Notes: a model not told the origin generated them from the sequence alone. DNA of 64,000 bases from Haliotis rubra (GCF_003918875.1 NW_025765503.1:1550001-1614000), one strand, 5' to 3'. Positions 19,495 through 64,000 are shown, counted from the stretch's first letter. A program made the numbers and translations.

Positions 19495-19565
19495 GGTCAC
19501 GTGGTACACATAAAACGGTATAACGGCGCGGAGTACCCACGTGACCCCTGAAAATAGGTATATAT
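19495..19565 (+). promoter_or_regulatory. Gene 1 promoter: inverted E-box pair plus TATA
   Basis: GGTCACGTGG 19495, CCACGTGACC 19537, TATATA 19559; ATG 77 nt after TATA. Confidence 0.75.
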
Positions 19566-19635
19566 GGAGGCCACCTTATAGTGACAGTATCAGTCATTTC
19601 ATCACTAGTGTATCGTCTAGTCAAGTCTGTTCATC

Positions 19636-20694
19636 ATGAAGGTAATACAAATCTGCATGGTTTCTATATCTTATGAGGAAAGTGTTTCTTGGTGGAATTT
19701 GGTGATTCTGAAAATGATTCTTATGTTGATGAAAACCATCGAATGATAAGATACATAGAATTATACGTGAATCAGCTCAGTAATGAAATATCGTTTAGTC
19801 GATTGCTGGTTACTCTATACCATTCCATGTGAAATGGCGGTATTCTTCTTATGAACAGGAACATATCAATTGTCTCCAAAACGACATGTGTCATAGACAA
19901 ATTTATTGAACTGTTTTCATTTTCTGTCTTCATTATCACAGAGACTTGGATTACTAACAAGTTATTCACAGAAGTACATTACTGGTTTGTTTGATGCAGA
20001 TTAACATGAGCCAGGTTCGGATATTTAAAAAAATGATAATAATATAAGAACTGTATTCAAGGCTACTTGTCTGTCATGGTTTTTTTTATTCGAACATCAG
20101 TCAAATAACATGCTTACTATTGGACACATCATACCAACAAATTTTCCTCAATTGAGTTATTCTAATTTCAACTAATTTTGGTTTCAGTTCGTCGTCGCTG
20201 TTTTGTCCGTGATGGTCTGCTCTGCCATGGCCCAGGTACCTCTCCTTGGTAAAGGAGCTGGAAATTTCGGCGTTGGCTTCAACAATGGACATATTGCTGG
20301 TAAAGGCTATGGCTACAACCCATACAATAACTATGGCTACAGTGGATACGGTAACGGTAAAGGTGTTGGCAACGTTGGCGTTGCTGGTACAGGCTATGAC
20401 TACAACCCCTACAACAACATTTATGGGTACAACGGCTATGGCTACGGTAAAGGCGTTGGTAACATTGGTGTTGGCAAAGCTTACGGAAACGGCTATATCC
20501 CCTACAACTACAACAACAATGGCTACGGCAAAGGTGTTGGCACATTCGTAGCTGGACATGGAGCTGGCCTTGTAGGACACGGACCAGTCGTTGGACACGG
20601 TCCCTTCATTGCTGGACACGGCCTTTACGGACATGATGGCAGCATTGCTAGACATGGACCTTTCGTCGGAAACGGTGTTTATGGACATGGTTGA
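19636..20694 (+). CDS. Secreted Gly/Tyr/Asn/His-rich structural protein, copy 1 (170 aa)
   Basis: Exon 1 ATGAAG 19636-19641|GT; exon 2 from 20188. MKFVVAVLSVMVCSAMA-Q signal. TGA 20692, then an open tail to TAG 20760. AATAAA 20825. Confidence 0.88.
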
Positions 20695-21753
20695 CTCTTC
20701 GTTGGTCATGGAGTTGCTGGTTCATTCGTCAACAAAGCCAGTCCGTATTACTACCACTAGAGACATATGCGTACCTGCTTTGTGTTTGAATGTTTTTATA
20801 CTGCATTGATTTGTTCTTTACATCAATAAAATGGATAAAATGTACCTAGCACATCCACGTATTGTGTTCAATCAACGTTAACTATATTGCGTCCGTTTTG
20901 ATCTGAATCTCCATGTAAATTACAATTTAAGTTTCACTAAGGTTCGAAGGAACTTACAGACTGAAGGTGATGGAAAATCAATGCTATAATACTGAGTATT
21001 TTAGTAGAGCAACATCAACGATTAACACCAAGATCATAGAACGTCTCCTGATTATCTTTTTGCATCTGTTGCCATTCACAACTGCACATATTTACTTACA
21101 CACACTCGTATGTAATATTTAGTATTGAGAAGAATGCTAAAATGTTTGAAACCTTTGTATTAAGATCGATTTCCCCAAGCCTCCGCTCCCACTCACGCAC
21201 CCGCGCACCCAGGCATGCACGCATGCACATACACGTGTACGTGCACCTACAAGTGTGGATTGTGTTACATTTACTATTAACGGCATAAGATTGGCATGTA
21301 GTTGCTATAGCAAAACCTATATAAACCTTTTCAGTTTCAAAACTGTTTCTTTGTCAAGTTGTGTTCAAGTAGGATTTTCCTGAAACCATTCGATTTTCGC
21401 GAAATCAAGGTGCAATAAAGTAAACAAGTCCAACCAAGGAGTGAGTACACGGTTATTGCGGTATGATTAGACATGCTATTGATTAAGTTCTGTAGTATTT
21501 GCTTTGTTTTGTAAAACGGAACCATGTGTCTTGCACACCGGAACAACAGAGTATACTTTAAATCTGCGTTCAAGTAAACCACTGACGGAACGATTTTGTT
21601 TACACATTTTTAATATTTAATATAACGGTGTTATGTAGGAATGTTCATATATTGTTTCACTTTCGTACCGATTTAGAGATTCGGAAACAGCTAACATTAG
21701 AAATGAATTTCAAAATATGACAAGGAAAGATAGATGCCACTGCGTCTGTGAGA

Positions 21754-25764: not shown

Positions 25765-25830
25765 TGTCACGTGGTACACATATGACGGCATGGAAAGTGC
25801 CCACGTGATCTCTGAAGATAAGTATATATA
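25765..25830 (+). promoter_or_regulatory. Gene 2 promoter: inverted E-box pair plus TATA
   Basis: TGTCACGTGG 25765, CCACGTGATC 25801, TATATA 25823; extra GGTCACGTG at 25644. Confidence 0.72.
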
Positions 25831-25896
25831 GAGGCCACCTTAGTGTTGTAGTATCATCTTCATCACTGGTGTATCGTCTAGTCAAGTCTGTTCATC

Positions 25897-27175
25897 ATGA
25901 AGGTAATATAAACGATCTGCATGGTTTGTTTTCATGCTATGTGGAGAGTACGTCTTTGGAATTTAACGACTTTGAAAATGACTCATTTGTTGATGAAAGC
26001 AATGCTTGAACCTGCGACACATTTAGAAACATACAGCTCAGTGGTGAAATATCGTTAAGTCGATCGCGGTTTAATTAATTACTTAATGCAAGGTCATGTG
26101 GACAGACGCAAAATGACATAACGACGTGTGTCTTAGAACTATGGACAATGAAAATCGGATATGATAAATGAGAGTATTAAGAGGTTTTTTAAATGAAAAG
26201 GAAGTACAGTGTTGTTCTTCTGCAATAAATGTATGAATGAATGGGTACCTAGAAGCTGTTATAGCCGTACAAATGGAAAAAGTTGATGAATAGCGTTTTC
26301 CAAAATGAAGTACATGTAGGTGGTCTATAGGTCTTTGCTCATATAGATTATAGAGTTGTTATATATTTTTGTATTTAATCACGCGATTCCCACTGAGACT
26401 CGAATTACTAACAATTTGTTCACAGAGACGCATATATTGTTATGTGTAGTGCAGATTAACAGATGCCAGTTTCGAATCTTTTCAAATGTTGCATCCACCA
26501 AGAGCTTGCATTCTAGGCTATCTGTCTGCCATGGTTTAATCCAACATCAGTCAAATAGCGTTACTATTGGAAGCATCATGTAAACACAATTTTCTGCATT
26601 TTCCCAACTAGCGGCTATTTTAGTCTTTACTTATTCTTTGTTTTCAGTTCCTCGTTGCTGTGGTGTCCGTCATGGTCTGCTCTGCCATGGCCCAGGTGCA
26701 TCTCCTTGGAAAAGGTGCTGGAAGTTTCGGTGTTGGACATATCGCTGGTAAAGGCTATGGCTACAACCCATACAATAACTATGGCTACAGTGGATACGGT
26801 AACGGTAAAGGTGTTGGCAACGTTGGTGTTGCTGGGGCAGGCTATGGCTACAACCCCTACAACAACAACTATGGGTACAACGGCTATGGCTACGGTAAAG
26901 GCGTTGGCAACGTTGGTGTCGGAAAGGATTACGGTAATGACTATAACCCCTACAACTACAACAACAAAGGCTACGGTAAAGGTGTTGCTGGTCACGGAGC
27001 TGGTCTTGTTGGACATGGAACCTTCGTTGGACACGGTCCCTTCAATGCTGGACATGGATCTTTCGTTGGAAACAACGTTGCCGGAAACGGTGTTTATGGA
27101 CATGGTGGACCCTTCGTTGGTCATAGAGTTGCTGGTTCATTCGTCAACAAAGCCAGTCCGTATTACTACCACTAG
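25897..27175 (+). CDS. Secreted Gly/Tyr/Asn/His-rich protein, copy 2 (177 aa, full tail ...SPYYYH)
   Basis: Exon 1 25897-25902, exon 2 26648-27175. GGA at 27107 where paralogs have TGA. Confidence 0.88.
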
Positions 27176-32371: not shown

Positions 32372-32444
32372 GGTCAGGTGGTATGCATTTAACGATGTAA
32401 CGGCATGGCGAGTGCCCACGTGACCACTGAGAATCAGTATAAAT
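32372..32444 (+). promoter_or_regulatory. Gene 3 promoter: E-box pair (first is a CAGGTG variant) plus TATAAA
   Basis: GGTCAGGTGG 32372, CCACGTGACC 32416, TATAAA 32438. Confidence 0.7.
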
Positions 32445-32514
32445 GGGTGCCACCTTATAGAAACAGTATCAGTCATCCCATCACTGGTGTGTCGTCTAGT
32501 CAAGTCTGTTCATC

Positions 32515-33754
32515 ATGAAGGTAATATAAACGATCTGCATGTGTATTTTATTTTCTTAAGTGTAATTTGTTGAGATTTAGGAGGACTCTTAAGGTGGGGA
32601 AAACAGGGTTGAATCTCCGAATTATGAGATACATATACAATCATACGTAAGTCGTGAACTTCTTTACTCAATGAATGCCATGTGAAACAGCGGCCTTATT
32701 GTTATGAACGGACACGTGTTATTTGTCCCCAGTATGACATGTGTCATAAAACTGTGGACATTGCAAATCTGATATGATAAATTAGAGTAACTTTTAATGA
32801 ATAAGAGTATCCAACGAAAAGGAAAGTCCGGACAGTTTCGTACTTTATCTGCGATGGATGTATCAATGAACGTGAAAGTAGAAGCGATTATAGCAATAAA
32901 AGGTTGACGAAGAGGGTTTTTAAACGTTATTTAAGTACATGAGTACATGGTCTACAGCTCTTTTTTCATACAATTTGTACAATTATTATCTTTTTTTTTT
33001 TTAATTGACAATTCTCACACGGCTTATTCGGACTGCTAACAATTTGTTTCAAGAGGCACATTACTTTTTTCATGTGCATGAAGATGTGCTAGTTTCGAAT
33101 CTTTCAAAATGATGCAAACACAAAAACTGCATTCAGGGATGTCTGTCGAACATCGGTCATACAGCATTACTATTGTAAACATTAAATCAAAACAGTAAAT
33201 AAAGTTTCTCTATTTTCATATTTCAGTTTCCCCTTATTTTCTGTTTACAGTTCGTCGTCGCTGTGTTGTCCGCCATGGTCTGCTCTGCCATGGCCCAAGT
33301 GTCTCTCCTTGGTAAAGGAGTTGGGAATTTCGGTGTTGGCTTCAACAATGGACACATTGCTGGTAAAGGCTATGGCTACAACCCATACAATAACTATGGC
33401 TACAACGGATACGGATACGGTAACGGTAACGGTAAAGGCGTTGGCAACGTTGGAGTTGCTGGTACAGGCTATGGCTACAACCCCTACGACTATGGCCACA
33501 ACGGCTATGCCTACGGTAAAGGTGTTGGCAACGTTGGTGCCGGAAAGGTTTACAGTAACGACTACAACCCCTACAACTACAACAACAATGGCTACGGTAA
33601 AGGTGTTGCTGGTCACGGAGCTGGTCTTGTAGGATACGGACCTTTCGTTACTGGACACAGTCCCTTCATTGCTGGACACGGCCTTTACGGACATGATGGC
33701 CGCATTGCTGGACATGGACCTTTCGTCGGAAACGGTGTTTATGGACATGGTTGA
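32515..33754 (+). CDS. Secreted Gly/Tyr/Asn/His-rich protein, copy 3 (169 aa)
   Basis: Exon 1 32515-32520, exon 2 33251-33754. TGA, then an open 21-codon tail to TAG 33820. Confidence 0.88.
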
Positions 33755-34081
33755 CCCTTTGTTGGTCATGGAGTTGCTGGTTCATTCGTCAAGAAAGCTA
33801 GTCCGTATTACTACCGCTAGACATATGCGTACATGCCTTATGTGTGAATGTTTTATACTGTATTGATGTGTTCTCCTTATCAATAAAATGGATAAATGTA
33901 CGTTGTGTATTGTATTCATTCAAACAATCGTATTCCACGTCAACTATACTGTGTCCGTATTGATCTCGAATTTACGTCTTTTGCAATTGGGAACATTCAG
34001 ATTGAAGGTAAACGAAAATCAATGATTTGTAGTAGATAATCATCTTCGATTAACAAGAAGATCACAAGTCTTCTCCTTACA

Positions 34082-34251
34082 GTGATTGAGTGAGTGAGGT
34101 TAGCTTAACGCCGCTTTTAGCAATATTCCAGCAATATCGCGGCGGGGGGCACCAGAAATTGGCTTCACACATTGTACCCAAGCGGAGAATCGAACCCGGG
34201 CCTTCGGCGTGACGAGCCAACGCTTTAACCACTAGACTACCCCACCGCCCC
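34082..34251 (-). mobile_element. tRNA-derived SINE with (CACT)n tail
   Basis: Minus strand GGGGCGGTGGGGTAGTCTAGTGGTTAAAGCG (box A)...GGTTCGATTC (box B)...CTCACTCACTCA. Confidence 0.85.
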
Positions 34252-34340
34252 CTCACGTGTATGTAATATCCAGGCAAGCAAACCACTGATTCAGTATCTA
34301 CAAGAACATAGGTGAAACTCCTGTCCTAAGATCCGCCTCC

Positions 34341-34410
34341 TCACACACACACACACACCCACACACACACATACACACGCGCGCACGCACGCACGCCTGC
34401 ACTCACACAC
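34341..34410. repeat. (CA)n/(GCAC)n microsatellite
   Basis: Direct reading. Confidence 0.9.
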
Positions 34411-37382: not shown

Positions 37383-38234
37383 TCAACCATGTCCATAAAC
37401 ACCGTTTCCGACAAAAGGTCCATGTCCAGCAATGCTGCCATCATGTCCGTAAAGTCCGTGTCCAGCAATGAAGGGACCGTGTCCAACGAAAGGTCCGTGT
37501 CCTACAAGACCAGCTCCGTGTCCAGTTACGAATGTGCCAACACCTTTACCGTAGACGTTGTTGTAGTTGTAGGGGTTGTAGTCGTTACCGTAAGCCTTTC
37601 TAGCACCAACCTTGCCAACACCTTTACCGTAGCCATAGCCGTTGTAGGGGTTGTAGCCATAGCCTGTACCAACGACGCCAACGTTGCCAACGCCTTTACC
37701 GTAACCATAGCCGTTGTACCCATAGTTGTTGTTGTAGGGGTTGTAGCCATAGCCTGTACCAACGACGCCAACTTTGCCAACGCCTTTACCGTAACCGTGT
37801 CCGCCATAGCCATAGTTATTGTATGGGTTGTAGCCATTGCCTTTACCAGCAATATTGTTGAAGCCAACACCGAAACTCCCAACTCCTTTACCAAGGAGAG
37901 GCACCTGGGCCATGGCAGAGCAGGCCATCACGGACAAAACAGACACGACGAACTGAAAACAGAATAAGTTCAAACTAAAATAACTCAGTTATGAAAATAC
38001 GGAAATCATGTTCATAAGATGTTCCCAATAACAGTATGATGTCAGGATCACACCAGGATCGATGGATTGATTGATGGATGGATGGATAAAAAATAAACAA
38101 TGAACGACTTAACGCAGTTATACCGCAGAACTTAATTTGTATACCCACAATCTGTTTTCACTGACAAAACACCAAATTCAATCCCAAAACACTTTAAACG
38201 TGATAGAACAACATATCGTTTATATTACCTTCAT
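37383..38234 (-). CDS. Secreted Gly/Tyr/Asn/His-rich protein, copy 4 (191 aa, inverted)
   Basis: Exon 1 38234-38229, exon 2 37952-37383. TGA stop; the tail's TAG has become TAC. Confidence 0.88.
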
Positions 38235-38304
38235 GATGATAAAACTTGACTAGACGGCACACCAGTGATGAGATGAGTGATACTATCACAATAAGGTGGT
38301 CTCC

Positions 38305-38369
38305 ATATATACTTATCTTCAAGGGTCACGTGGTCGTTCACCATGCCGTTATATGTGCACCACGTGACC
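38305..38369 (-). promoter_or_regulatory. Gene 4 promoter: inverted E-box pair plus TATA
   Basis: E-boxes at 38360-38369 and 38324-38333; TATATAT at 38311-38305. Confidence 0.75.
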
Positions 38370-42319: not shown

Positions 42320-42383
42320 GGTCACGTGGTGCACATAATGTTGTGGAAAGTGACCACGTGACCTCTGAAGATAGGTATATATG
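42320..42383 (+). promoter_or_regulatory. Gene 5 promoter: inverted E-box pair plus TATA
   Basis: GGTCACGTGG 42320, CCACGTGACC 42354, TATATA 42377. Confidence 0.75.
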
Positions 42384-42452
42384 TAGGCAAACTCATAGTG
42401 ATAGAATCAGTCATCTCATCACTGGTGTATTGGCTAGTCAAGTCTGTTCATC

Positions 42453-43372: not shown

Positions 43373-43830
43373 CCCTTCGGTGGTGATAGAGTTGCTGTTT
43401 CAGTTGTTAGCAAAACCAGTCCCTATTACTACCTTTAGATATATGTGCTGAAATGCCTCAAGTGTGAATGTATTTATACTGTATTGATTTGTTCTCAATT
43501 AATAAATAAAATGAACCCAAACTATCCATGTATTGTGTTCATTCCAACAACCGGATTCGTGGGTGTGTTTGTTCTGTTAAATGTTGTGCACCTGGCCCCA
43601 AAACAATCTTTCATTAACGAGTTTCTTAGATTACTATCTACGATTAGATATCGGTCATGTTTTATTCTCATGATAATCCCCACACAAGTACAGTAAAGGA
43701 AGCTAAAATAATAGTGTATGATGCTACAATCAATAATAATTTGTACATATGATGGGCTCCTGTAACAAGATACCTTTTAATGACACATTTAATTTTGTAC
43801 AAATGCAATACAATTATTGTAATGACTAGT

Positions 43831-49530: not shown

Positions 49531-49604
49531 AGTCACGTGGTGCACATATAACAGATATAATGGTGTTGAAAGTGACCACGTGACCCCTGAAGATAAGTAT
49601 ATAT
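49531..49604 (+). promoter_or_regulatory. Gene 6 promoter: inverted E-box pair plus TATA
   Basis: AGTCACGTGG 49531, CCACGTGACC 49576, TATATA 49598. Confidence 0.75.
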
Positions 49605-49674
49605 GAAGACAACCTCATAGTGATAGTATCAGTCATCCCATCACTGGTGTATCGTCTAATCAATTCTGTTCATC

Positions 49675-50487
49675 ATGAAGGTAACGTTCCATTTTGTTTC
49701 CATCACGTTTCAACGTTCATTTGGTGGGGATTGGTGACTCTGAAAGGTTTGTTATGTTCGTGTAAACAGGTTGTCAACATACAAATTGTGAGATAGATTT
49801 ACGATCATACGTGCACCAACCTTTAGATCTGTGGTATAATCTCGTTAAGGCGTTCATTGTTCACATTATCCATTCATCATAGTTTTATTCTGACACATTT
49901 ACATGTATACTTTTATTGGGAACATGAACATGATTTTAAAATATCTTTCCTATTTTCATGACAGAGTTATCGTATTTTCAACTTATCTTTGTTTTCAGTT
50001 CGCCGTCGCTGTGTTGTCCGCCATGGTCTGCTCTGCCATGGCGCAGGTGCATCTCCTAGGTAAAGGAGCTGGAACTTTCGGCGTTGGCTTCAACAATGGA
50101 CGTTTTGCTGGAAAAGGCTATGGCTACAACCCATACAATAACTATGGCTACAGTGGATACGGTAAAGGTGTTGGCAACGTTGGCGTTGCTGGTACAGGCT
50201 ATGGCTACAACCCCTACAACAACAACTATGGGTACAACGGCTATGGCTATGGTAAAGGCGTTGGCAACGTTGGTGCCGGAAAAGCTTACGGTAACGTCTA
50301 TAACCCCTACAACTACAACAACAATGGCTACGGTAAAGGTCTTGCTGGTCACGGAGCTGGTCTTGTAGGACACGGACCATTTGTTGGACACGGTCCCTTC
50401 ATTGCTGGACACGGCCTTTACGGACATGATGGCAGCTTTGCTGGACATGGACCTTTCGTCGGAAACGGTGTTTATGGACATGGTTGA
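49675..50487 (+). CDS. Secreted Gly/Tyr/Asn/His-rich protein, copy 6 (164 aa)
   Basis: Exon 1 49675-49680, exon 2 49999-50487. TGA, then an open tail to TAG 50553. Confidence 0.88.
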
Positions 50488-53400
50488 CCCTTCGTTGTCT
50501 ATGGAGTTGCTGCTTCTGTTGTTAGCAAAGCCAATCCCTATTATTACTACTAGATATGTGTTCTGAAATGTCTCAAGTGTGAATGCTTTTGTGCTGTATT
50601 GATTTGTAATTAATGAATAAATAAAATGAACCCCAAATATCTATGTATTGTGTTTATTCAAACAGCTGGATTCGTGGGTGTTTTTGTTCTGTTAAATACT
50701 GTGTACCTAGACCAAAAACAATATATGATTAACGAGTTTCTTAGATTACCATCTATGGTTATATATCGGTTATGTTTTATTCTGATAATCCACATATATA
50801 TGGATTTAAGTTCTCCAGTACAGTAAAGGAAACTAAAATTGCTGAATTGTGTTACAATCAATAAGCATCTGTACATATGGTGAGCTCCTGTAACAAGATA
50901 CTTTTTATGACACATTTCCTTTTGTACAAATGCAAAGAAAGGACATCAATTGAAATATTATACCCGACACTGCTATGTTAAGGTAGGAGGGTCAAACTGA
51001 TATTTATAAGTGTTAATGATCGTATCCTGGGACTCAAATGGTGGCATGCACAAACTATAACAACACAGTAGGCCTACATTCAGTAACATAGTTGGCAATG
51101 CCATATGACTTTTACTCTCACATAAACTAGTCATGATGTTTTTTAGAAGTTGTTATCCTATCATGGCGAGCTGAAGTCTCTTAATAGTTCTTCACACCAC
51201 TTTGCAGGAATTCTATTCCCTTTGAGGTACAATATATGTGAAAATCTGTTCTTATGTCCCCTGTCGTGACATTGGTGGGATAACGTAATGCCAAACGAAT
51301 GCAGTGACGAATCAGTAAAATATGAGCCTGTCTCATCTTACCGCAATCACTGGAGCGCTGCATAACAGTTACATGTGTGGAATGTATTAGAAGTACAATT
51401 ACGTTCACGAAAACATTGTGATATAGTATAGAAATCCCAGAACTGTTCAGTTCATATTCAGGGTACTCCTTATGCACAAAATAGCATGTTCGTGATAGAA
51501 CAAAAAGAGTTATTTCGAGAGCCGCCCATATGTTCTTGTCCGTTTTTATCGAGGTCTCGTCCCATCTCTCAAGGGAGGCCACTCTTCCAATATTATTGAC
51601 ACTCACTATAATGATATTACAACTGCCAATCTATTTTATACCACCATTCATGTTAATTGCACTGCCATAGGCATATCGAGGCGTTGTTGTCACGCGCAAA
51701 AATAATGACACTGCAATGATTGCTGAAGCAAAGCGATTCTACGAGTCTCACAATGTTAAAGTGACGATTATTTATAGCTAACCACTAGTTTTAAAAAGGC
51801 TAATAGATCCAAATTGTAATAACTAAGGAACATAAATAATTAACAACCACACTATGACGGTTTATCACGATTTTCTTTACTGACAAATGACTAAGACAAA
51901 TTCTAAGGCTTCATCTTACGTCTACTTTCCGTTATCCAAGGAACTGAAGAAGTGTTGAATGTCTTCACAAACATCCCGCTTGGCAATGTCATTAACCCGG
52001 CATTGGTCCATACGCCTGAATCAACATCTACTGCATTTAATTATTCTTCCTTTAATGGATTTATACTCACAAAATAAAGATCGATGAACTAAACAGGAGG
52101 AAGTTTATGACTGTGAACAACATACTGATTTACAGTTGGGTTAAAACAGTTCAACTTGCTGGTAAGTTCAAATGCTTAGTTTGAACCGCAAAAGCAACAC
52201 AACCTTACATGGGAAGCAATGGTTCGTATTAAAAGAGATACATATAAATGTACAATTACCTGCAGTTTCGACAATATAATATGTTAATGCAAAAATCAGG
52301 GGTAATCTATGGGTGGTTTCAAATGATAAAATAAAACGTGTGAGAAACCATGGTTGAATATGATAGAAAAGTGTATCATTCAGCTGACAGTTCATTAAAG
52401 TTTCCCTAATGTGCTATTGCGGGTTTGACAAAGTAGATATCATTGCATATCTTCCCCTGTGTGAGTGTCACGTATTATTCGATTTTCATTCACCAGCAAA
52501 TACTGATGAAAACAATGTGCAGGTTAAAGCGGAGATTTCCTATAAATATGAATTTGATTTCCCGTTCCTATTTTATACATACACGCACGCATCCATAGTT
52601 ATGTGCTCTATTGCACAGATATGATGCACGCCAAATGAATGCAGCAGCACCTGGAAAGTACTAGTCATTATAATAGTAGTCTTGCGCAACGTATGGACAG
52701 TTTTATACAGTAATATCAATGGCCTGGACATCAGTATAGTTCATTGTAAAAGACATCGTCAAGCATCATACAAATCCATATCACGAAGCTGTGTAGAAAA
52801 CAACGAATCGATTATTAGCATCAACGACAAACACGAACAATCAATCAGATCATCGAGAATGTGTCTTCCCTTACCTAGTGCAATAGAATATTCATAATAT
52901 CCGTCTCCAAAGCCTAAATTTAGGTAATTATGATGCCCACCAGATTCGAAATTAAGGGAATGATCAAACACATATCTGTGTTAAGGTTTTTTATGTGATA
53001 TGAGCAGGTTAATCCATGATGTATTGGTAAATGGACATGACATAGGATCTGCTTTGTTGCGTCACACGGGTGTTGAAGGATAGTAGGGCTTGTCTGTCGG
53101 GAATAAGTCAGTCTCACTCATAACGTTAAACTGATGAATATTTATGATACGCCGTACGTTATATAGACATACATTGAAATAATCCCCGAAAATAAACGAT
53201 TTACGAACACACACTAGCGATATAAAATCACTGTGTATAATGTAATCACCATTAAGATGACTTCTTAGTGTTAATTTGAATTTTATTTTCCGATATCCTA
53301 GTAACGACTGGAACCTGACCTGAAGTGTTGAAGGTCTTCATTGCCCAACACGCCCCTAGCATTGGCCATAACCCTGCAAGACTCCACACAACTGTTTGCA

Positions 53401-54777: not shown

Positions 54778-54847
54778 AGTCACGTGGTGCACATATAACA
54801 TAATGGTGTTGGAAGTGACCACGTGACCCCTGAAGATAAGTATATAT
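54778..54847 (+). promoter_or_regulatory. Gene 7 promoter: inverted E-box pair plus TATA
   Basis: AGTCACGTGG 54778, CCACGTGACC 54819, TATATA 54841. Confidence 0.75.
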
Positions 54848-54917
54848 GAAGACAACTTCATAGTGATAGTATCAGTCATCCCATCACTGGTGTACCGTCT
54901 AGTCAATTCTGTTCATC

Positions 54918-55670
54918 ATGAAGGTAACGTTCCATTTTGTTTCCATCACATTTCAACGTTCATTTGGAGGGGATTGGTGACTCTGAAAGGCCTGTTATGT
55001 CTGTGTAAACAGGTTGTCAACATACAAATTGTGAGATAGATTTACGATCATACCTGCACCAACTTTTAGTTCTGTGTTATAATCTGGTTAAGGATTTCAT
55101 TGTTTACATTATCCATTCATCATAGTTTTATTCTGACACATTTACATGTATACTTTTATTGGGAACATGAACATGATTTTAAAATATTTTTCCTATTTTC
55201 ATAACAGAGTGATCGTATTTTCGACTTATCTTTGTTGTCAGTTCACCGTCGCTGTGTTGTCCGCCATGGTCTGCTCTGCCATGGCACAGTTACCTCTCCT
55301 TGGTAAAGGAGCTGGAACTTTCGGCGTTGGCTTCAACAATGGACGTATTGCTGGTAAAGGCTATGGTTACAATCCATACAATAACTATGGCTACAATGGA
55401 TACGGTAACGGTATAGGTGTTGGCAACGCTGGTGTTGTTGGTACAGGCTATGGCTACAACCCCTACAACAACAACTATGGGTACAACGGCTATGGCTACG
55501 GTAAAGGCGTTGGTAACGTTGGTGCTGGAAAAGCTTACGGTAACGACTACAACCCCTACAACTACAACAACAATGGCTACGGTAAAGGTGTTGCTGGTCA
55601 CGGTGCTGGTCTTGTAGGACACGGACCTTTCGTTGGACACGGTCCCTACATTGCTGGACACGGCCTTTAA
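54918..55670 (+). CDS. Secreted Gly/Tyr/Asn/His-rich protein, copy 7 (144 aa, truncated at TAC>TAA)
   Basis: Exon 1 54918-54923, exon 2 55242-55670. The former coding tail has a 1-nt deletion, the shared TGA (55733) and a further deletion. Confidence 0.8.
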
Positions 55671-56094
55671 GGACATGATGGCAGCTTTGCTGGACATGAT
55701 CTTTCGTCGGAAACGGTGTTTATGGACATGGTTGACCCTTCGTTGGTCATAGGGTTGTTAGCAAAGCTAGTCCCTCTTACTACCATTAGATATATGCGCT
55801 AAAATACTTTAAGTGTGAATGTTTTTATACTGTAATGATTTATTGTCAATAAATAGATAAAATGTAGACAACATGTATTGTTTTCATTCAAAGAGCCGGA
55901 TTTATACTGTTTGATTAACGACTTTCTTAAATTACCGTATATGGTTATCATGTCATGGTTTATTCTGACGATAATTTCAATAGATTTCATTAATCGCAGG
56001 ACATGCTTACCCCTTAACCTTCATATACTTGGATCAACCAGATGGTGCCACATGAATACGCGCAAACGCCCAGTTGCGGGTACAGCAACGTGCA

Positions 56095-56320: not shown

Positions 56321-56608
56321 NNNNNNNNNNNNNNNNNNNNNNNNNNNNNNNNNNNNNNNNNNNNNNNNNNNNNNNNNNNNNNNNNNNNNNNNNNNNNNNN
56401 NNNNNNNNNNNNNNNNNNNNNNNNNNNNNNNNNNNNNNNNNNNNNNNNNNNNNNNNNNNNNNNNNNNNNNNNNNNNNNNNNNNNNNNNNNNNNNNNNNNN
56501 NNNNNNNNNNNNNNNNNNNNNNNNNNNNNNNNNNNNNNNNNNNNNNNNNNNNNNNNNNNNNNNNNNNNNNNNNNNNNNNNNNNNNNNNNNNNNNNNNNNN
56601 NNNNNNNN
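56321..56608. other. Assembly gap (288 N)
   Basis: Run of N. Confidence 1.
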
Positions 56609-59223
56609 TAAAACGGTTTTATGGATCTACAGTAAATTGCATTACATTCAGATATCATATGTACATATGGTGAGATCTTGTCATAAGAGATAACCGTGCA
56701 GATCCGGGTTAGAACCAATTCGAATGACGGGATCTGGTGGACAGGCTGGCTGACCCGGTTGACACATGTCATCGTGTCTTAAATGCGTAGATCGATGTCG
56801 AAGTGCGGCGTTAAACAGCAAGCAATCACACAAACTAAATCCTGTCATACGATCACAGATATGTTATGACCTTTCTTTTTCTACAAATGCGAAATAATGT
56901 CATTATCGGAAATGTCAGCTACATAGCGGTGGTCCGTAGATAATCGAGTCTGGACTAGACAATCCAGTGATCAACAGCATGAGTGTCGATCTACGCAACT
57001 GGGATACGAGAAGATGTCTCAACCAAGTCAGCGAGCCTGACAGGAGAAAGTTAACGGTTGTATTAACTATACTGATTTACTGTTGGATTGAAACATTTAA
57101 ACTAGCTGGTAAGTTCAAAGTTTCGACAACATAATATATTAATGCAATAATCAGGGGTAATCTATGAATGGTTTGAGAAACGTGTGAGAAACCATGGTTG
57201 AATATGATAGAAAAGAGTATCAATCAGCTGACTGTTCATTTAAGTTTCCCTAATGTGCTATTACACAGACCGTTACATGGTACGAAAGTGTGCCCTATCA
57301 CCACTGCAGTAATACACTTTTGGCATATAACAATGGTTCCTGTTCCTGTTTATATTTTAATTTGGAGAAGGCATAAATTTTGCACATACACGCGCGCGCA
57401 CACACTCACATGCCGGCGCGTAGACGCACTTATATATCTGTGTTCTCTGTGTCAGGAATACTATTAAAGCCAAATATATTTAACTTGTATATTAAAGACA
57501 CCTATCACAGTGTCATTCATGTACATCAGTGTCTGCATTCAATGCCAGGTTTCAGAAAATTTGATACCCAGTCTTAAAAATGAAAGTATAACATTAATGA
57601 AAATGTTTCTAAAGCTTGACCACAGTCACTTGAAGGTGAGTATTATTACCATTGACTATATTGCTGTTACCACTGCAAAGATATTTTATACTGCCACTAT
57701 TTGAATTACACTGCCACAGGCATGGAGAAGCGTTGTTGTCACACAAAGACAATGACACTGCTATGATCACTGGAGCAACGCGAGTCTCACAACAATTAAG
57801 TGATCAATATTTATAAATAACCACTAGTTTTAAAAAAATGTAATAATTCAGGAACATAAATAATCTACGAGCAAACTTTGACGATTTTATCACGATTTCC
57901 TTTAACATGATCGCCATTAAGACGAATTTTAAATTTTCGTCTACATGTACTTTCCGTTATCCAAGGAATAATGAAGAAGTGTTGAATGTCCTCACAAACA
58001 CCCCATTAGCAATGCAATAAACCCTGCATGATTCCACATCAATTGTATTCAATAATTATTTCTTTCAATAATTCAATGAACTAAACAGGAGAAAGTTAAA
58101 GACTGTAAATATCTATACTGATTTTACGGTAGGGTAGTAAGTTCAAATATTTAGTTTCAAGCGCAAAGGCAAAACTACCTGAAAGAGACGCAGGTGTAAT
58201 ATCGACACAGATACATGTAAATGTTCTATTGAATGCTTTTATTGAGGAGCAATCTATGAACGGTTTTGCATAATTTCTGACATTTCCTAGCTTGATTACA
58301 TTCATATTGGTGGCTCAGTTGCAAGCACCCGATACTATATCCTAAGTTTTTAATTATGTGGATTCAACATCTGCTTCATAAGCTGATATACAAACCGCTC
58401 AGTAAAGCTACATTTGCCATTAGTTAGCATACGCCATTCACTTCTTCAGCTCCAATTGAAAACCTATCATGCAGGTTCCCTTTAAATATTGGCGTAAACG
58501 GAACCGTATTAGAAGGGGATCTGGTTACAACGTTTCTTCATATACAAATGCAATTGTCGGAACAGCCGGGATAAACCGCTAGATCAGTATGTACAAACGC
58601 TGTCTTCAGTCTTCAGTCCACACCACGTGGACGCAACTCTGAGAGACGACAGAGACAGATTTCCCCTCTGTTCGTTTCTTTGTTACGTGTTATGTGTTAT
58701 GTTCTATGTTGAGTTCGTGTTAGGGGGTTTGCAAGTGCGTATGTTAGGCGTTCTTGTTTTATCGAAACCGTGTTACTCGAAGTTAAACGTTTAAACAAAG
58801 TCAGCATCAATTCCGATTTTCTTTCCAATCAAAAGTTGACCAACAGTGATATCACTGTTCAACGCTTAGTTAAATCCATTTCACTCAAAGATTCGTAAGT
58901 AAATACAACAATATATATTGTCAGGTACATGTGTGTTTATTCTTTGAGATAATTTAACGATAAAAGGGTGAGGAAATCCCCTATAAAACACAGTCATACA
59001 TCATGCATCTCTAGCACAGCATCTAATGGTGATTGTAGGGACTGGCTTTGCCGACAAAAGAAACAGAAAATCCTTGTCCCACAAACGGTTCTCCATGTCC
59101 ATAAACACCGCGACCAGCAGCTCCTCGTCCGACGAAAGGTTCATGTCCAGCAACGAAACCCTCATGCCCGTAGACACCTTGGCCACCAAATGGACCATGA
59201 CCAGCGAAACTGCCATCATGTCA

Positions 59224-59669
59224 CTAAAGGCCGTGTCCAGCAACGAAGCGATCGTGTCCGACGAAAGGTCCGTGTCCTACAAGACCAGCTCCATGTCCAG
59301 CAACGTTCCCAACACCTTTACCGTAGCCATAGCTGTTGTAGTTGTAGGGACTGTAGTTGTAACCATAACCTTTAACATCAACACCAACGTTGCCAACGCC
59401 TTTATGATAGCCATATTCGTTATAGCTGTTGTATGGATTGTAGCCATAGCCGTTTCCAGCAATACCGAAAGATCCGGATCGACGGGGAAGTTGCGCCAGG
59501 GTAGAGGCGACTAGCACGGACAACACAGCAACGACAGCCTGAATACATAAAACAAAATAACTTTATTAGAGTCGTAACTGAATGGATTAGCTGGATCAAC
59601 ATAAGCTTGAGAAATCACTGAGATACCAGATATAAAGTTTGAAGAGATGTGCACATATCTCACCTTCAT
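59224..59669 (-). CDS. Secreted Gly/Tyr/Asn/His-rich protein, copy 8 (106 aa, divergent, truncated TAC>TAG; possibly a pseudogene)
   Basis: Exon 1 59669-59664|GTGAG, exon 2 59538-59224. MKAVVAVLSVLVASTLA-Q signal. After TAG-TGA the frame stays open for 65 codons to TAG at 59023. Confidence 0.75.
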
Positions 59670-59674
59670 GATGA

Positions 59675-59998
59675 GGTGAGGTGAGGTGAAATTGGGTTTT
59701 ACGTCGTGCTTGAGAATATGTGTATGTGCGGCTGCTTGTACTAGCCCAGACTGAAGCTGGTTTTATAGTGCTAGCCCACTGAGATACCATGCCGCAGTGA
59801 AGCATGAATACCCCACTCAGACACATTATACTGACTCCGAGCCGACCAGTCCTTGTTGTACCCATTAATGCCGAGCGCCAGGCAGGGACCAACAAGTACC
59901 ATATTTTAAGGTCTTTTGGTATGACGCGGTCGGGGATCGAACCCGCGACCTTCCGCTCTCCGGGCGGACACTCTAACCACTACACCAAGGAGGCGGTC
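59675..59998 (-). mobile_element. Full-length tRNA-derived SINE inserted in exon 1 of copy 8
   Basis: Box A TGGTGTAGTGG, box B GGTTCGATCCC, (CTCAC)n tail; 12-bp TSD CCTTCATGATGA at 59663 and 59999. Confidence 0.9.
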
Positions 59999-60086
59999 CC
60001 TTCATGATGAACAGACTTGACTTGAAGATGCACCAGTGTTGAGAAGACTGATGCCACAACCTTGGTTTTCCTTAAAACCGTCACAG

Positions 60087-60097
60087 GGTCACGTGAC
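60087..60097 (-). promoter_or_regulatory. Gene 8 upstream palindromic E-box GTCACGTGAC
   Basis: Same position relative to the exon-1 leader (CACTGGTG...CAAGTCTGTTCATCATG) as in paralogs, but only one box remains. Confidence 0.55.
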
Positions 60098-60950: not shown

Positions 60951-61408
60951 GTGAGTGAGTGAGTGAGTGAGTGAGTGAGTGAGTCAATATTTAACGTCAC
61001 ATCGGCAATATTTCAGCCATATCGTGACGAGAACATTTGACATTGAAATGAAACATATGTATATTAAAAATACCTGCCGACGAAGGACAGTAAAACAACT
61101 AGAATATCACAGATTTGTATGTAAAACTAGTAATTAAATCTAAAACGTTTTAACTATAGGGGGAAAACAATACAGTATAAAAATGAGCTATAAATCGCCA
61201 ATAACTGAAGGTAAATCACCATACCAGGGACCATGGGGACTTACATTACTTTTGCTACCTGCATGGACCCTAGTTGGATTTACACCATCCCTTCAGCCAT
61301 TGGCGACAGAAGAGAAATCTAGCTATAAATTAAAAGCACACATATTCTACGATTAAAAACGTGGCAAGCCTAAATTTACTCTAAATGTGTTGGGACTTAC
61401 GTACCGTG
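60951..61408 (-). mobile_element. Retroposon 3' fragment with (ACTC)n tail
   Basis: (GAGT)n at 60951-60985, flanking CAACTTGT duplication; related sequence at ~35210-35400. Confidence 0.55.
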
Positions 61409-63190
61409 CAACTTGTACTGTGTCTTATATGTAGCATTCCTTCATATAACAAGAAGATTTAACCTCACAAAATTTCATTAGAAACCGAACAAACTAGCAC
61501 ATAGTACATGTTCGTATGCCCGATTCAACTTGCAAACACAATTTTACTTCAACATTTTGTTAATGTAGTTGTTACTTTCACTTGAATGGTGTTAAAGATC
61601 TGCGAAGAGACAGATCAACTGATTAAACTGGAACTGCTGTTTCACACCTTCATAACACAACACGACTGTATACGTTATTTGCAAGTTTGATAACTGTTAT
61701 AAACTATTTGATTGGGGTTTTTTCTATGGTTGCATTCACATTTAAATGATTACTCAATTCAGTCATCAATTCTTTACATCAACGTCATGGGTTATACAAT
61801 TCAGTCATTCATTCTCAGATGGTTTATGATGCAAAACTAATGTGTCCACGACAACTTTGGTGGGATATTTCATGAAAGCAATTAAAAGCTGTGAATTTGC
61901 ATAGTACCTATTTGTGTCCGAATCTCATTTAAGATTTAAGCCTGAGGCTATGATCCCGACACCGTGTGCGGTCAGAATGACATCGAATGTACTGCCCCGG
62001 GCGACGAATTAATCCCAAGTCATTAAAGGTTTACCCCAAACTGAAAACAATATTAAAGAAAGTACATCATTGTAGTATCTTTTTAGCTGAAACGCATTGA
62101 CGAATAATGGTACAGGTATGAAAAGGTTATGTAAAATATCATTCTTTTCCAAAAATCTTGTCCCAACGATATTATTCTCCAGAATGAAGGTGTGAATTTC
62201 CAGACCTCTACGTATACCGAATCGCACTTATTATAAATGCTTGAGACTATAATCTCTTGCGGTGAAAATTACATCGAATGTATTGCCCCGGACGAGGTAT
62301 TAATCCCAAGTCATTAAACGTTCACTCTCCACACTTTTTAAAGACAGTTCATTAAACCATTGAAACATTACGTCCCAAGCTTGTATAAAGATTATGTAAT
62401 TACTATTTGTAATACATACATAGATTTGTGTTTCAAAAATGTTTGAATTTAAGTTTATATGTGTGTATGTTTTTCTGCATGATTTTTAAGTCTAATAAAG
62501 AAAGTAATCTTGTCTCGCTCTGGTTACTACAAAATTGATGACAAAAACCTATTGTAAACCGATGTATATACACGCATACTGATTGGTGAGCATAACTTTT
62601 CCAAGTTTTTGTCTATTACATAAGAAGCATTATATATCTTCAAATACATATTAACATTATACCCTCGACGTCTTGGGAGTACCACTACAATTACAATTGT
62701 ATTTATTCCATTCAGAAATGGGCATTTTCGAAAGCATAACGGTTAAAATCAAAATTAGAATACGCCACAATCATGAAGATAAGATACAGTTGTACCAACA
62801 CTCACATGTACAGTTAATTCCCAGTAATCTGTACACGCTTCCTGATCAACGGAATATTACTGGATACATTTAGGATCAAGGGAATAATACTGGATACATT
62901 TGGGAGAACAGCCATTTTATCCTGAAGGGTCGGCCTGCATTTTCGTTAGACACAGGGTATATATCATTATCTAAAAACACGTATTTTGTCTTTGGAGAAG
63001 AGAGACAGATAAGCAAATCACAATGCATCACGGAAATCATTGATGATTTCCGTATCAGAGTGGTGTGTGATCGTGTTATAATTATCACTAACATAGTTGT
63101 AAATTCATCCATAATGTGACAATTAACAACGATGTTATTATAATCCACTAAAGTTGATGCTGTCAAACCTAATGTTTCTGTTATTTTCAG

Positions 63191-63907
63191 ACCATCATCA
63201 CTGCATTGTCCGTGCTTGTCGCCTCTGCCGTGGCCCAGGTGCCTTTCGGAAAGGGATCCTTCGGTGTTGCCACTGTTGGCGTTGCTGGTTCAGGCTACGG
63301 CTACAACCCTTACATCAAGAACCATCCTTACAACGACTACAACCCCTACAACAACTACGGCTACAATAAACGCGTTGGGAAAGATGCTGGACTTGGATCT
63401 TTCGTTGGTGACAAGGGACACGGCTACGGTTACAATTCCTACAACGGTCTCGGCAATGGTGTTGGTCTTGTAAGAAATGGACTTCTTGGACACAACGGAC
63501 ACGGTCTCGTTGGACCCGTTGCAGTTGGACACGCTGTTGCTGGTCGCGGGCATGGTTACGGCTACAACCCTTACAACAACAACTACGGCTACGGTAAGAA
63601 CGTCGGACATGGAGCTGGTCTTGTTGGAAATGGAGTCCATGGACACGCCGGACATGGCCTTGCTGGACCCCTAGCGGTTGGACACGGTGTTGCTGGTCAT
63701 GGGTATGGCTACGGTTACAACCCTCACAACAACTACGGCTACGGTAAGAACGTCGGACATGGAGCTGGCCTTGTAGGAAATGGAGTTGTTGGACATGGCC
63801 CTTTCGTTGGACACGGAGATTCTGGACACGGTGTTTATGGACATGATGGACCTTTTGTTGGTCATGGTGTTACTGGGTCCTTCGTCAGTTCCCTCTACTA
63901 CCACTAG
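63191..63907 (+). CDS. Secreted Gly/His/Tyr/Asn-rich protein, copy 9 (exon 2, 238 aa; most divergent, full tail ...SSLYYH); exon 1 not located
   Basis: Acceptor TTTTCAG at 63190; TIITALSVLVASAVA-Q signal remainder; GHG/GYGYNPYNN repeats; AATAAA 63990. Confidence 0.82.
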   Translation, partial: TIITALSVLVASAVAQVPFGKGSFGVATVGVAGSGYGYNPYIKNHPYNDYNPYNNYGYNKRVGKDAGLGSFVGDKGHGYGYNSYNGLGNGVGLVRNGLLGHNGHGLVGPVAVGHAVAGRGHGYGYNPYNNNYGYGKNVGHGAGLVGNGVHGHAGHGLAGPLAVGHGVAGHGYGYGYNPHNNYGYGKNVGHGAGLVGNGVVGHGPFVGHGDSGHGVYGHDGPFVGHGVTGSFVSSLYYH

Positions 63908-64000
63908 AGACGTGCCCTTATATGCTGCCTGATGTATGAGTGGTTTTCTTGTTCTATTGATACTGTTTTGTATTACTAAACGAATGGAAAATAAAGTTGA

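What the first reader, a model, noticed from the sequence alone, without database searches (positions are those of the whole stretch)
19495..63907. Nine-gene array of secreted diblock GYN/GHG proteins with squid-beak-type GHGx(Y/F) coacervation motifs
Seen: nine paralogs (7 plus strand, 2 minus) with a signal peptide cleaved before Gln. An N-block holds variable numbers of GKGVGNVGV and GYGYNPYNNNYGY modules, and a C-block holds GHGAGLV, GHGPF, GHGLY, GHGPY, GHGVY; the mature chains have no Cys. Established: GHGxY pentapeptides (x = L, V, P) drive pH-triggered coacervation of Dosidicus histidine-rich beak proteins. Inference: this is a co-regulated kit of phase-separating, Tyr/His cross-linkable matrix proteins for a sclerotised structure (jaw, radula, operculum or periostracum) in what looks like a non-cephalopod mollusc, with repeat number and His-block length varying between copies.
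Basis: partly seen in the sequence, partly recalled or inferred. Interest (0 to 1): 0.8.

Follow-up and report, generated by a model that had tools for sequence, protein, structure and literature searches.

The report
Abalone-only array of secreted Gly/Tyr/His proteins
The blacklip abalone carries a tandem cluster of small genes, found only in abalones, for secreted, unstructured glycine/tyrosine/asparagine proteins with a histidine-rich tail; they look like building material for some hard or sticky structure, but their likeness to squid-beak proteins is only motif-deep and the tissue is unknown.

Summary
Nine paralogs (7 plus strand, 2 minus) lie at the stated places, each with a signal peptide ending AMA|Q, a Tyr/Asn/Lys-rich N-block and a His-rich C-block. 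The mature chains have no Cys.

Corrections:
- The window is Haliotis rubra (100% match to QXJH01000155.1).
- Each gene has two exons; exon 1 codes only Met-Lys.
- Only c1-c6 look functional. c7 has a stop plus a frameshift. c8 has a SINE in exon 1 and two stops. c9 has lost its promoter and its splice donor.
- Five copies (c1, c3-c6) share an in-frame TGA that removes a 21-residue tail kept in all six H. asinina and H. rufescens genes examined. Gene conversion spread this C-block.
- The N gap is intergenic.

An exhaustive HMMER search found relatives only in Haliotis. dN/dS is 0.2-0.4. A TATA box and an E-box sit at fixed positions across three species.

The squid-beak analogy is weak. Each protein has 0-1 strict GHGxY motif, His is 5% and pI is 9.1-9.4. 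The published minimal coacervation arrangements need four tandem copies or two plus spacers.

No RNA run was listed. The family is absent from two abalone shell proteome papers. Function is therefore inferred: a secreted, self-assembling structural protein, tissue unknown. The scan had not noted this family elsewhere.

The parts
19498..20830 (+). c1. E-boxes at 19498 and 19538, TATA at -77, ATG AAG at 19636-19641, a 546-nt intron, exon 2 at 20188-20694 and AATAAA at 20825. It encodes 170 aa and ends at the shared premature TGA.
25768..27175 (+). c2. E-boxes at 25768 and 25802, ATG at 25897, a 745-nt intron and exon 2 at 26648-27175. It encodes 177 aa and is the only type A copy with the full C-terminal tail ending SPYYYH. 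It has no strict GHGxY and the proximal AATAAA is missing.
32417..33887 (+). c3. One E-box (32417), TATAAAT, ATG at 32515 and exon 2 at 33251-33754. It encodes 169 aa and is TGA-truncated. By position it is the orthologue of H. asinina gene 2 in L001.
37247..38366 (-). c4. E-boxes at 38327 and 38361, ATG at 38234-38232, a 276-nt intron and exon 2 at 37952-37383. It encodes 191 aa, has an extra GYN module and is TGA-truncated. Its N-block is orthologous to H. asinina gene 3, but its C-block has been converted to the H. rubra type.
42323..43506 (+). c5. ATG at 42453 and exon 2 at 42767-43372. It encodes 203 aa, has extra 117-nt and 30-nt duplications and is TGA-truncated. The untranslated tail is decaying.
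49534..50621 (+). c6. ATG at 49675 and exon 2 at 49999-50487. It encodes 164 aa and is TGA-truncated. The untranslated tail is decaying.
54781..55853 (+). c7. The promoter is intact, ATG is at 54918 and exon 2 is at 55242-55670. The reading frame stops at a TAA in place of the Tyr codon of GHGLY (144 aa) and a frameshift follows. It is truncated or a pseudogene.
56321..56608 (.). Assembly gap of 288 N. It is intergenic, between c7 and c8, and no family sequence abuts it.
58936..60095 (-). c8, a pseudogene. A 324-bp SINE-like insert (59675-59998) sits at the exon 1/intron junction with a 12-bp target-site duplication (TCATCATGAAGG). Exon 2 runs from 59538 and carries adjacent TAG and TGA stops at 59226-59221. 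The promoter has no TATA.
62773..63995 (+). c9 (type B, alternating GYN/GHG modules, 240 aa, full tail). The exon 2 ORF 63191-63907 is intact. The exon 1 remnant ATG AAG at 62773-62778 is followed by AT instead of GT, and the E-box/TATA promoter is not recognisable.

Best explanation
This is part of a tandem array of at least 12 genes in Haliotis rubra: nine in the window and three more just beyond its 3' end. The family is found only in abalones.

Gene structure. Each gene has a TATA/E-box promoter, a tiny first exon (5'UTR plus Met-Lys), one phase-0 intron, and a second exon encoding the rest of a 15-22 kDa secreted protein.

Protein. It is intrinsically disordered and cationic (pI about 9.2). 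It has two blocks:
- a polar N-block of 30-residue modules, a Lys/Val/Gly stretch followed by a GYGYNPYNNNYGY-type stretch;
- a C-block of GHG-x-(F/Y/V) units with almost no charge other than His.

Most likely mechanism (inferred, not shown). The proteins are stored soluble in acidic secretory granules, where the C-block carries about +5 to +6. On release into seawater at pH about 8 the histidines lose their charge, and the C-blocks associate hydrophobically. The Tyr/Asn/Lys block adds aromatic and cation-pi cohesion, and supplies Tyr and Lys for oxidative cross-linking. The product would be a dense protein phase or matrix in an extracellular structure (periostracum or shell framework, radula or jaw cuticle, or an adhesive). 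The tissue is not known.

Array evolution. The array evolves by birth and death and by gene conversion. In H. rubra a C-block ending in a premature TGA has spread to five or six copies, and three copies are decaying.
For: Shown:
- Nine paralogs with a common two-exon structure. NCBI uses the same ATG-AAG|GT...cag structure for six genes in H. asinina and H. rufescens.
- The window is identical to H. rubra QXJH01000155.1, and three further paralogs lie beyond its end.
- Purifying selection: dN/dS is 0.21-0.42 in 25 paralog and ortholog pairs.
- Promoter footprint: 78% identity at -160..-1, against 41% far upstream and 57% in the intron. The proximal E-box sits within 4 nt of -98 in all 14 type A/B genes checked in three species, and TATA near -77 in 13 of them.
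- A conserved AATAAA lies about 130 nt after the TGA.
- Composition: Gly 31%, Tyr 13.5%, Asn 13%, Val 10%, His 5%, Lys 4.5%, Cys 0, pI 9.1-9.4.
- Block segregation and calculated C-block charge of +4.5 to +6.4 at pH 5 against -1 to 0 at pH 8.1 in the TGA-truncated copies (c2: +8.4 to +2.0).
- Disorder: pLDDT 37.8.
- The nearest language-model look-alikes are arthropod low-complexity cuticle proteins, a lead only.
- Only Haliotis proteins are hit among 1.84 billion representatives (names).
- High and variable copy number: at least five identical 168-aa genes at 3.3-kb spacing in H. asinina.
- Gene conversion: C-block pS is 0.03-0.14 among c1, c3, c4, c5 and c6, against 0.16-0.29 in the N-block. 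c4 compared with its positional orthologue has N-block pS 0.156 but C-block pS 0.457.
- The pH-switch logic of GHG-type His/Tyr peptides is established for squid HBPs (PMC6884462).
Against: - There is no expression evidence. No RNA run was listed for c3/c4.
- No exact copy of five of the Haliotis RefSeq models (P0001, P0003, P0005, P0006, P0007) was found outside genome assemblies.
- The family's motifs are absent from the supplements of the H. laevigata shell proteome and from the H. asinina silk-like mantle protein set, and no such protein is listed in the H. asinina shell proteome.
- GHGxY copy number is below the minimal arrangements that phase-separated among the HBP peptides tested.
- The net charge of about +5 to +9 at seawater pH would oppose simple self-coacervation unless it is screened or paired with polyanions.
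- Aromatic residues are no more evenly spaced than in shuffled sequences.
- Three of the nine copies are damaged, and the only full-length type A copy (c2) lacks the usual polyA signal.
Confidence: 0.55

Rival explanations
1. Mantle-edge periostracum or shell-framework proteins. They would be the abalone functional counterpart of pearl-oyster shematrins and KRMPs: basic Gly/Tyr proteins laid down and tanned by tyrosinase. This is a more specific version of the best explanation.
For: The proteins are basic, secreted and Gly/Tyr-rich. NCBI's pipeline named one member 'shematrin-like protein 2'. Shematrins are described as Gly-rich, repetitive, mantle-edge proteins whose C-terminus ends in Tyr (PMC2034539). 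The E-box flanks (TCACGTGA in H. rufescens) would fit MiT/TFE-type factors, which drive tyrosinase genes. That last point rests on my own knowledge and is not tested.
Against: The family was not found in the H. laevigata nacre and prismatic proteome supplements, in the 14 H. asinina shell proteins, or among the H. asinina mantle silk-like proteins. There is no sequence similarity to any bivalve protein in the exhaustive search. The C-terminus is ...SPYYYH or ...GVYGHG, not a basic motif ending in Tyr. The same E-box also fits the ubiquitous factor USF.
Confidence: 0.2
2. Matrix proteins of the chitinous feeding apparatus (radular teeth, jaws, gastric shield). They would infiltrate a chitin scaffold and harden it, as the first reader proposed by analogy with squid beak.
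For: The His block with GHGLY, GHGPF and GHGVY units is pH-switchable. The nearest feature-space look-alikes are arthropod chitin-cuticle low-complexity proteins at score 0.85, a lead only. Absence from calcified-shell proteomes is compatible with a site outside the shell.
Against: There are no tissue data at all. The composition and pI are unlike HBPs. There is no chitin-binding domain (Pfam gives nothing).
Confidence: 0.2
3. Cationic glycine-rich antimicrobial or immune effector proteins encoded by a fast-turnover, lineage-specific tandem array.
For: The proteins are secreted, cationic (pI 9.1-9.4), Gly/His/Tyr-rich and small. The array is lineage-restricted, with copy-number change and pseudogenes.
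Against: dN/dS of 0.2-0.4 shows no sign of diversifying selection. About 13% Asn and 13% Tyr in 30-residue modules, and multiple identical copies, are more typical of bulk structural proteins. The TATA/E-box promoter shows no obvious immune-type elements, though this was not searched formally.
Confidence: 0.1
4. In H. rubra the window's array is largely a decaying relic. The shared TGA and the other lesions would mean the proteins no longer matter in this species.
For: Eight of the nine copies carry some lesion compared with H. asinina and H. rufescens genes: TGA in c1 and c3-c6, TAA plus a frameshift in c7, a SINE plus two stops in c8, and a lost donor and promoter in c9. c2 lacks the usual polyA signal.
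Against: The TGA removes only 21 of about 190 residues. The truncated copies keep their promoters, splice sites, polyA signals and open frames, with dN/dS of 0.2-0.3 among themselves. The C-block upstream of the TGA is the most homogeneous part (p-distance 0.048), while the cut-off tail drifts (0.173) as expected if the stop is used and the rest is maintained.
Confidence: 0.07

Closest known systems
Dosidicus gigas histidine-rich beak proteins (HBP-1, -2, -3)
   Same: Both are secreted, disordered, Gly-rich proteins with a repetitive C-terminal region of Gly-His-Gly-x-aromatic pentapeptides. Both use the logic of His deprotonation at seawater pH (PMC6884462; PMC11931252).
   Different: Here there are 0-1 strict GHGxY per protein, against seven in tandem in HBP-2. 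His is 5%, whereas HBPs are more than 50% Gly+Ala+His. pI is 9.1-9.4, against about 6. There are no GAGFA/GFA units. The large Tyr/Asn/Lys N-block has no HBP counterpart. No sequence homology was detected.
Pinctada shematrins / KRMP-type Gly/Tyr shell framework proteins
   Same: Both are small, secreted, basic, Gly/Tyr-rich and repetitive, and both form multigene families. One Haliotis member is auto-named 'shematrin-like protein 2'.
   Different: There is no detectable homology. The repeats differ (GKGVGNVGV plus GYGYNPYNNNYGY). There is a His block. The C-terminus is SPYYYH or GVYGHG rather than the conserved C-terminal motif ending in Tyr. The family was not found in abalone shell proteomes.
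Squid suckerins (sucker ring teeth)
   Same: Both are rich in Gly, Tyr and His, Cys-poor and modular, and both are large paralog families of secreted structural proteins (PMC11931252).
   Different: Suckerins alternate Ala/Thr/His beta-sheet modules (AATAVSHTTHHA type) with Gly/Tyr/Leu modules. No such Ala-rich module exists here, and Asn and Lys are prominent instead.
Mytilus byssal thread matrix proteins (Gly/Tyr/Asn-rich), from my own knowledge and not checked here
   Same: The unusual Gly+Tyr+Asn composition matches that of the N-block.
   Different: Abalones make no byssus. No homologue was retrieved by the profile search. TMPs have no His block, as far as I recall.
Uncharacterised RefSeq models in Haliotis (XP_067660487 'scale keratin-like', XP_046362886 'shematrin-like protein 2', XP_046561801 'glycine-rich cell wall structural protein-like')
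   Same: These are true family members: 72-76% identity, the same exon structure, the same modules and a syntenic array.
   Different: Those names are automatic and misleading. The H. rubra models are chimeric: a 638-aa model fuses two genes, and a 445-aa model ends at c9's stop and runs upstream across c8. All six H. asinina and H. rufescens genes examined keep the full C-terminal tail that most H. rubra copies have lost.

Membership tests
Squid histidine-rich beak proteins (HBPs) | A C-terminal tandem array of GHGxY pentapeptides. The minimal phase-separating arrangements among the peptides tested were at least four in tandem, or two GHGLY separated by at least three GAGFA/GHGLH spacers. | tested here: not met
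   There are 0-1 GHGxY and 1-3 GHGxF per protein, never four in tandem. The criterion comes from PMC6884462.
Squid histidine-rich beak proteins (HBPs) | Composition of Gly+Ala+His above 50% and pI about 6. | tested here: not met
   Gly 31% + Ala 5% + His 5% is about 41%, and pI is 9.1-9.4. The HBP values are from PMC11931252.
Squid histidine-rich beak proteins (HBPs) | Sequence relatedness to DgHBPs. | tested here: not met
   The profile HMM search of 1.84 billion representatives returned only five Haliotis clusters. Caveats: low-complexity filtering, and I cannot verify that HBPs are in the library.
Squid histidine-rich beak proteins (HBPs) | pH- and salt-triggered liquid-liquid phase separation, and infiltration of chitin. 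| not testable with these tools
   This needs recombinant protein. Only the calculated charge switch of the C-block is available, +4.5 to +6.4 at pH 5 against -1 to 0 at pH 8.1 in the truncated copies.
Shematrins (Pinctada) | A secreted, basic, Gly/Tyr-rich repetitive protein. | tested here: met
   Signal peptide, Gly 31%, Tyr 13.5%, pI above 9.
Shematrins (Pinctada) | A conserved C-terminal motif ending in Tyr, and sequence homology to shematrins. | tested here: not met
   The C-terminus is SPYYYH or GVYGHG. There were no bivalve hits. The feature is as described in PMC2034539.
Shematrins (Pinctada) | Mantle-edge expression and presence in the prismatic shell layer. | tested here: inconclusive
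   No RNA run was listed. The family's motifs are absent from the H. laevigata shell proteome supplements, and no such protein is listed in the H. asinina shell proteome. Cross-linked proteins can escape such proteomics.
Suckerins | Alternating Ala/Thr/His-rich beta-sheet modules (M1) and Gly/Tyr/Leu modules (M2). | tested here: not met
   There is no Ala-rich module. Ala is about 5% and Thr is rare. The definition is from PMC11931252.
Haliotis GYN/GHG family (uncharacterised RefSeq models) | Two exons with exon 1 = ATG AAG; an AMA|Q-type leader; GKGVGN and GYGYNPYNN modules; a GHG block; a syntenic tandem array. | tested here: met
   72-76% identity to H. asinina and H. rufescens proteins. 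The exon structure is identical. The flanks are collinear with the H. asinina locus. The tree places c1-c8 with H. asinina genes and c9 with H. rufescens genes.

The most novel reading that the evidence does not exclude
Abalones evolved, independently of cephalopods, a lineage-specific toolkit of pH-switchable block proteins. On secretion these would phase-separate and then cross-link to build a protein-rich extracellular material.

The cluster of more than 130 kb encodes a compositional series:
- type A, a GYN-rich diblock;
- types B and C, alternating GYN and GHG modules;
- type D, almost pure GGIVGGHG repeats.

This series could set a mechanical or chemical gradient. In H. rubra, gene conversion has fixed a shortened C-block lacking the Tyr-rich tail, which may have retuned the material.
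Probability: 0.2. Interest if true: 0.75.

Novelty: new variant of a known kind. Interest (0 to 1): 0.45.

Why it matters
If these proteins do build an abalone hard part or adhesive, they would be a second, independently evolved molluscan case of His/Tyr block proteins that assemble on a pH cue. Their chemistry is different (cationic, Asn-rich) and useful for bio-inspired coacervates and coatings.

The locus is also a clean natural example of concerted evolution. A premature stop and its surrounding block have spread across paralogs while each gene's N-block keeps its orthology.

Practically, the H. rubra annotation here is wrong: the models are fused or missing. The automatic names in other abalones ('scale keratin-like', 'chorion protein-like', 'shematrin-like') should not be taken as function.

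Tried and rejected
- RNA evidence: the look-up of sequencing runs on 32401-38400 (c3 + c4) listed no run. This is 'none was listed', not 'none exists'.
- Pfam on three family proteins: nothing.
- Literal motif searches of 8 million papers (GYGYNPYNN, ASPYYYH, GHGPFVGHG, YGYNPYN): no paper.
- Motif searches in the supplements of the H. laevigata shell proteome and of the SilkSlider paper: none.
- Searches for the RefSeq names together with 'abalone': nothing relevant.
- Has-tsfgr1 (GGYGLGL repeats) was considered and rejected as a different protein.
- Aromatic-spacing test ('stickers and spacers'): no different from shuffles, z from -0.9 to +0.5, and +2.6 for c9. It neither supports nor refutes phase separation.
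- ARAGORN found no tRNA in the c8 insert. The SINE call rests on the tRNA-like head seen by eye, the 12-bp target-site duplication, and 74-85% similar copies elsewhere in H. rufescens.
- Selenocysteine or readthrough decoding of the shared TGA: considered unlikely. The cut-off tail diverges 3.6 times faster than the C-block and carries radical changes in c5 and c6. The near-identity of the tail in c1, c3 and c4 leaves a small doubt.
- ATGAAGGT at 62184 as c9's exon 1: rejected in favour of the homologous remnant at 62773.
- The third word-index protein search was not used. The exhaustive HMMER search had already answered the question of relatives.

Full report
**What is there**

The ORF list of 19-64 kb shows nine related reading frames rich in Gly, Tyr, Asn and His. 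Seven are on the plus strand and two on the minus strand. A six-frame motif scan of the whole window finds exactly these nine clusters and nothing else.

Each ORF is preceded by a polypyrimidine tract and CAG. A block 0.13-0.75 kb upstream is conserved in eight copies and ends in TCATC-ATG-AAG-GT (9 matches against 0.23 expected by chance).

The genes therefore have two exons:
- Exon 1 is a short 5'UTR plus Met-Lys.
- A phase-0 intron of 125-745 nt follows.
- Exon 2 encodes the rest of the protein.

NCBI's models for six relatives in H. asinina and H. rufescens use exactly this structure.

**Whose genome**

The closest proteins are Haliotis asinina and H. rufescens RefSeq models at 72-76% identity.

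The exhaustive profile search also returned a 638-aa H. rubra model. Its locus overlaps the window: L003 20419-27451 equals window 64000-56968 at 100% identity. The window is therefore H. rubra assembly GCA_003918875.1, contig QXJH01000155.1.

Three further paralogs lie just beyond the window's 3' end on the opposite strand. They have a different C-terminus and a different promoter.

The RefSeq models here are chimeric. The 638-aa protein contains two signal peptides. A 445-aa model ends at c9's stop and runs upstream across c8.

**The proteins**

The mature chains have these properties:
- Mass is 15-22 kDa for the complete copies.
- Composition is Gly about 31%, Tyr 13.5%, Asn 13%, Val 10%, His 5%, Lys 4.5%, almost no Asp or Glu, and no Cys.
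- pI is 9.1-9.4.

In c1-c8 the two halves are sharply different:

| Block | Length | Tyr | Asn | Lys | His |
|---|---|---|---|---|---|
| N-block | 65-140 aa | 13-23 | 9-25 | 3-9 | 0-2 |
| C-block | 24-61 aa | 0-4 | 0-5 | 0-1 | 4-7 |

At the DNA level the N-block is built of a 90-nt unit repeated 1.9-2.4 times. c5 has extra duplications and c4 has an extra module. c9 and the H. rufescens genes instead alternate the two kinds of module, with a 153-nt unit x2.2 in c9.

AlphaFold2 finds only the signal-peptide helix (mean pLDDT 37.8). Pfam finds nothing.

**State of the nine copies**

- c1, c3, c4, c5 and c6 end at an in-frame TGA. At this position c2 and all six H. asinina and H. rufescens genes examined have a Gly codon (GGA in c2). 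The TGA removes a 21-residue tail ending SPYYYH.
- c7 carries the same TGA further downstream. It already stops at a TAA replacing the Tyr codon of GHGLY, and it then has a frameshift.
- c8 has a 324-bp SINE-like insertion exactly at the exon 1 donor, flanked by a 12-bp target-site duplication. It also has adjacent TAG and TGA stops in exon 2.
- c9 has an intact exon 2. Its exon 1 remnant (62773) is followed by AT instead of GT, and the upstream E-box/TATA region is not recognisable.
- c2 is the only full-length type A copy, but it lacks the AATAAA that the others keep about 130 nt after the TGA.

**The assembly gap**

The gap 56321-56608 is intergenic. I did not attempt to fill it.

**Are the genes real and constrained?**

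Pairwise dN/dS is 0.21-0.42 in 25 paralog and ortholog comparisons.

The 160 nt before the ATG are 78% identical among c1-c7. Far upstream the figure is 41%, and in the intron it is 57%. The proximal CACGTG sits within 4 nt of -98 in all 14 type A/B genes checked in three species. TATA sits near -77 in 13 of them. A second E-box lies at -128 to -141 in most. This supports shared regulation. It does not say where the genes are expressed.

**Concerted evolution**

The flanks of c3 and c4 are collinear with H. asinina genes 2 and 3. c4 groups with gene 3 in the CDS tree (89/97).

Among the TGA copies the C-block is much more uniform (pS 0.03-0.14) than the N-block (pS 0.16-0.29). Comparing c4 with its positional orthologue gives N-block pS 0.156 but C-block pS 0.457. 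So a C-block carrying the TGA has been copied between paralogs in the H. rubra lineage.

Downstream of the TGA the former coding tail diverges 3.6 times faster than the C-block (p-distance 0.173 against 0.048). The 3'UTR is at 0.258. The tail carries radical replacements in c5 and c6. This fits a stop codon that is actually used.

**Range of the family**

A profile HMM search of 1.84 billion representative proteins gave five hits, all from Haliotis. The word-index searches agree.

In H. asinina the cluster spans at least 136 kb. It includes at least five identical 168-aa genes at 3.3-kb spacing, and more divergent members made mostly of GGIVGGHG repeats.

**The squid-beak comparison**

Among the HBP variants and peptides tested, phase separation was seen only with at least four tandem GHGLY, or two GHGLY separated by at least three spacer pentapeptides. 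HBP-2 has seven tandem copies (PMC6884462). HBPs are more than 50% Gly+Ala+His with pI about 6 (PMC11931252).

The abalone proteins have 0-1 strict GHGxY (none in c2), 1-3 GHGPF-type units, 5% His and pI above 9. They are not members of that family, and they do not match the minimal arrangements that phase-separated in that study.

The underlying logic does survive. The calculated charge of the C-block falls from about +5 or +6 at pH 5 to about 0 at pH 8.1, while the N-block stays at +5 to +9. That is a hypothesis, not a result.

**Function**

The family's motifs are absent from the H. laevigata shell proteome supplements and from the H. asinina mantle silk-like set. The 14 H. asinina shell proteins include none like it. 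The literal motifs occur in no searchable paper.

The protein-language-model look-alikes are arthropod low-complexity cuticle proteins at 0.85, below the level that counts as more than a lead.

I therefore commit only to this: a secreted, disordered, self-associating structural or matrix protein family of abalones. The most likely sites are the mantle edge (periostracum or shell framework) or a chitinous feeding structure, with roughly equal weight. A cationic antimicrobial role and simple decay are less likely rivals.

**Verdict**

The family is real, lineage-restricted and uncharacterised. It is a new variant of the known kind 'secreted Gly/Tyr/His low-complexity structural proteins'. It is not a squid-beak-type HBP.

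Noticed in passing
window 378-7853: This is a Polinton/Maverick-like element. It has a 1116-aa protein-primed DNA polymerase B with an endonuclease VII-like segment (3619-6969, minus strand). It also has a stand-alone BIR/IAP ORF (1141-1485) and a C2H2 zinc-finger ORF (6900-7853, minus strand). The 228-aa ORF at 378-1064 had no Pfam hit.
   Followed up: partly
window 38792-40026: A LINE-type reverse transcriptase fragment (RVT_1, then zf-RVT) is inserted between c4 and c5.
   Followed up: partly
window 59675-59998 (minus strand): A 324-bp SINE-like element with a tRNA-like head is inserted at c8's exon 1 donor, with a 12-bp target-site duplication. Copies 74-85% similar lie at other places in the H. 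rufescens locus L002. ARAGORN calls no tRNA in it.
   Followed up: partly
L003 1-20418 (H. rubra, beyond the window's 3' end): Three more paralogs lie here (exon 2 at 1675-2625, 10864-11733 and 16543-17448), with a different C-terminus (…GFGG.ATGHYY) and no E-box/TATA at the family positions. RefSeq fuses two of them into one 638-aa model.
   Followed up: partly
L005/L006 (H. asinina CM074527.1, about 72.69-72.72 Mb): At least five tandem genes encode an identical 168-aa family member at 3.33-kb spacing. This is a very recent amplification.
   Followed up: no
L004 2274-2882 and 7396-8022 (H. asinina): These are divergent cluster members made mostly of GGIVGGHG(L/V)AGHGG repeats with a single GYGYNNYGYG module. 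They suggest a compositional series within one cluster.
   Followed up: no
window 20692-20757, 37385-37320 (minus strand), 33752-33817: The 63-nt former coding tail after the shared TGA is nearly identical in c1 and c4 (1 difference in 63) and has no indels in any copy. In c5 and c6 it is clearly degenerate. Recent conversion is the simple explanation. Stop-codon readthrough (TGA followed by C) is not excluded for c1, c3 and c4.
   Followed up: partly
window 27176-27690: c2, the only full-length type A copy, lacks the AATAAA found about 65 nt after the ancestral stop in the other copies. The nearest candidates are ATTAAA at 27516 and AATAAA at 27686.
   Followed up: no
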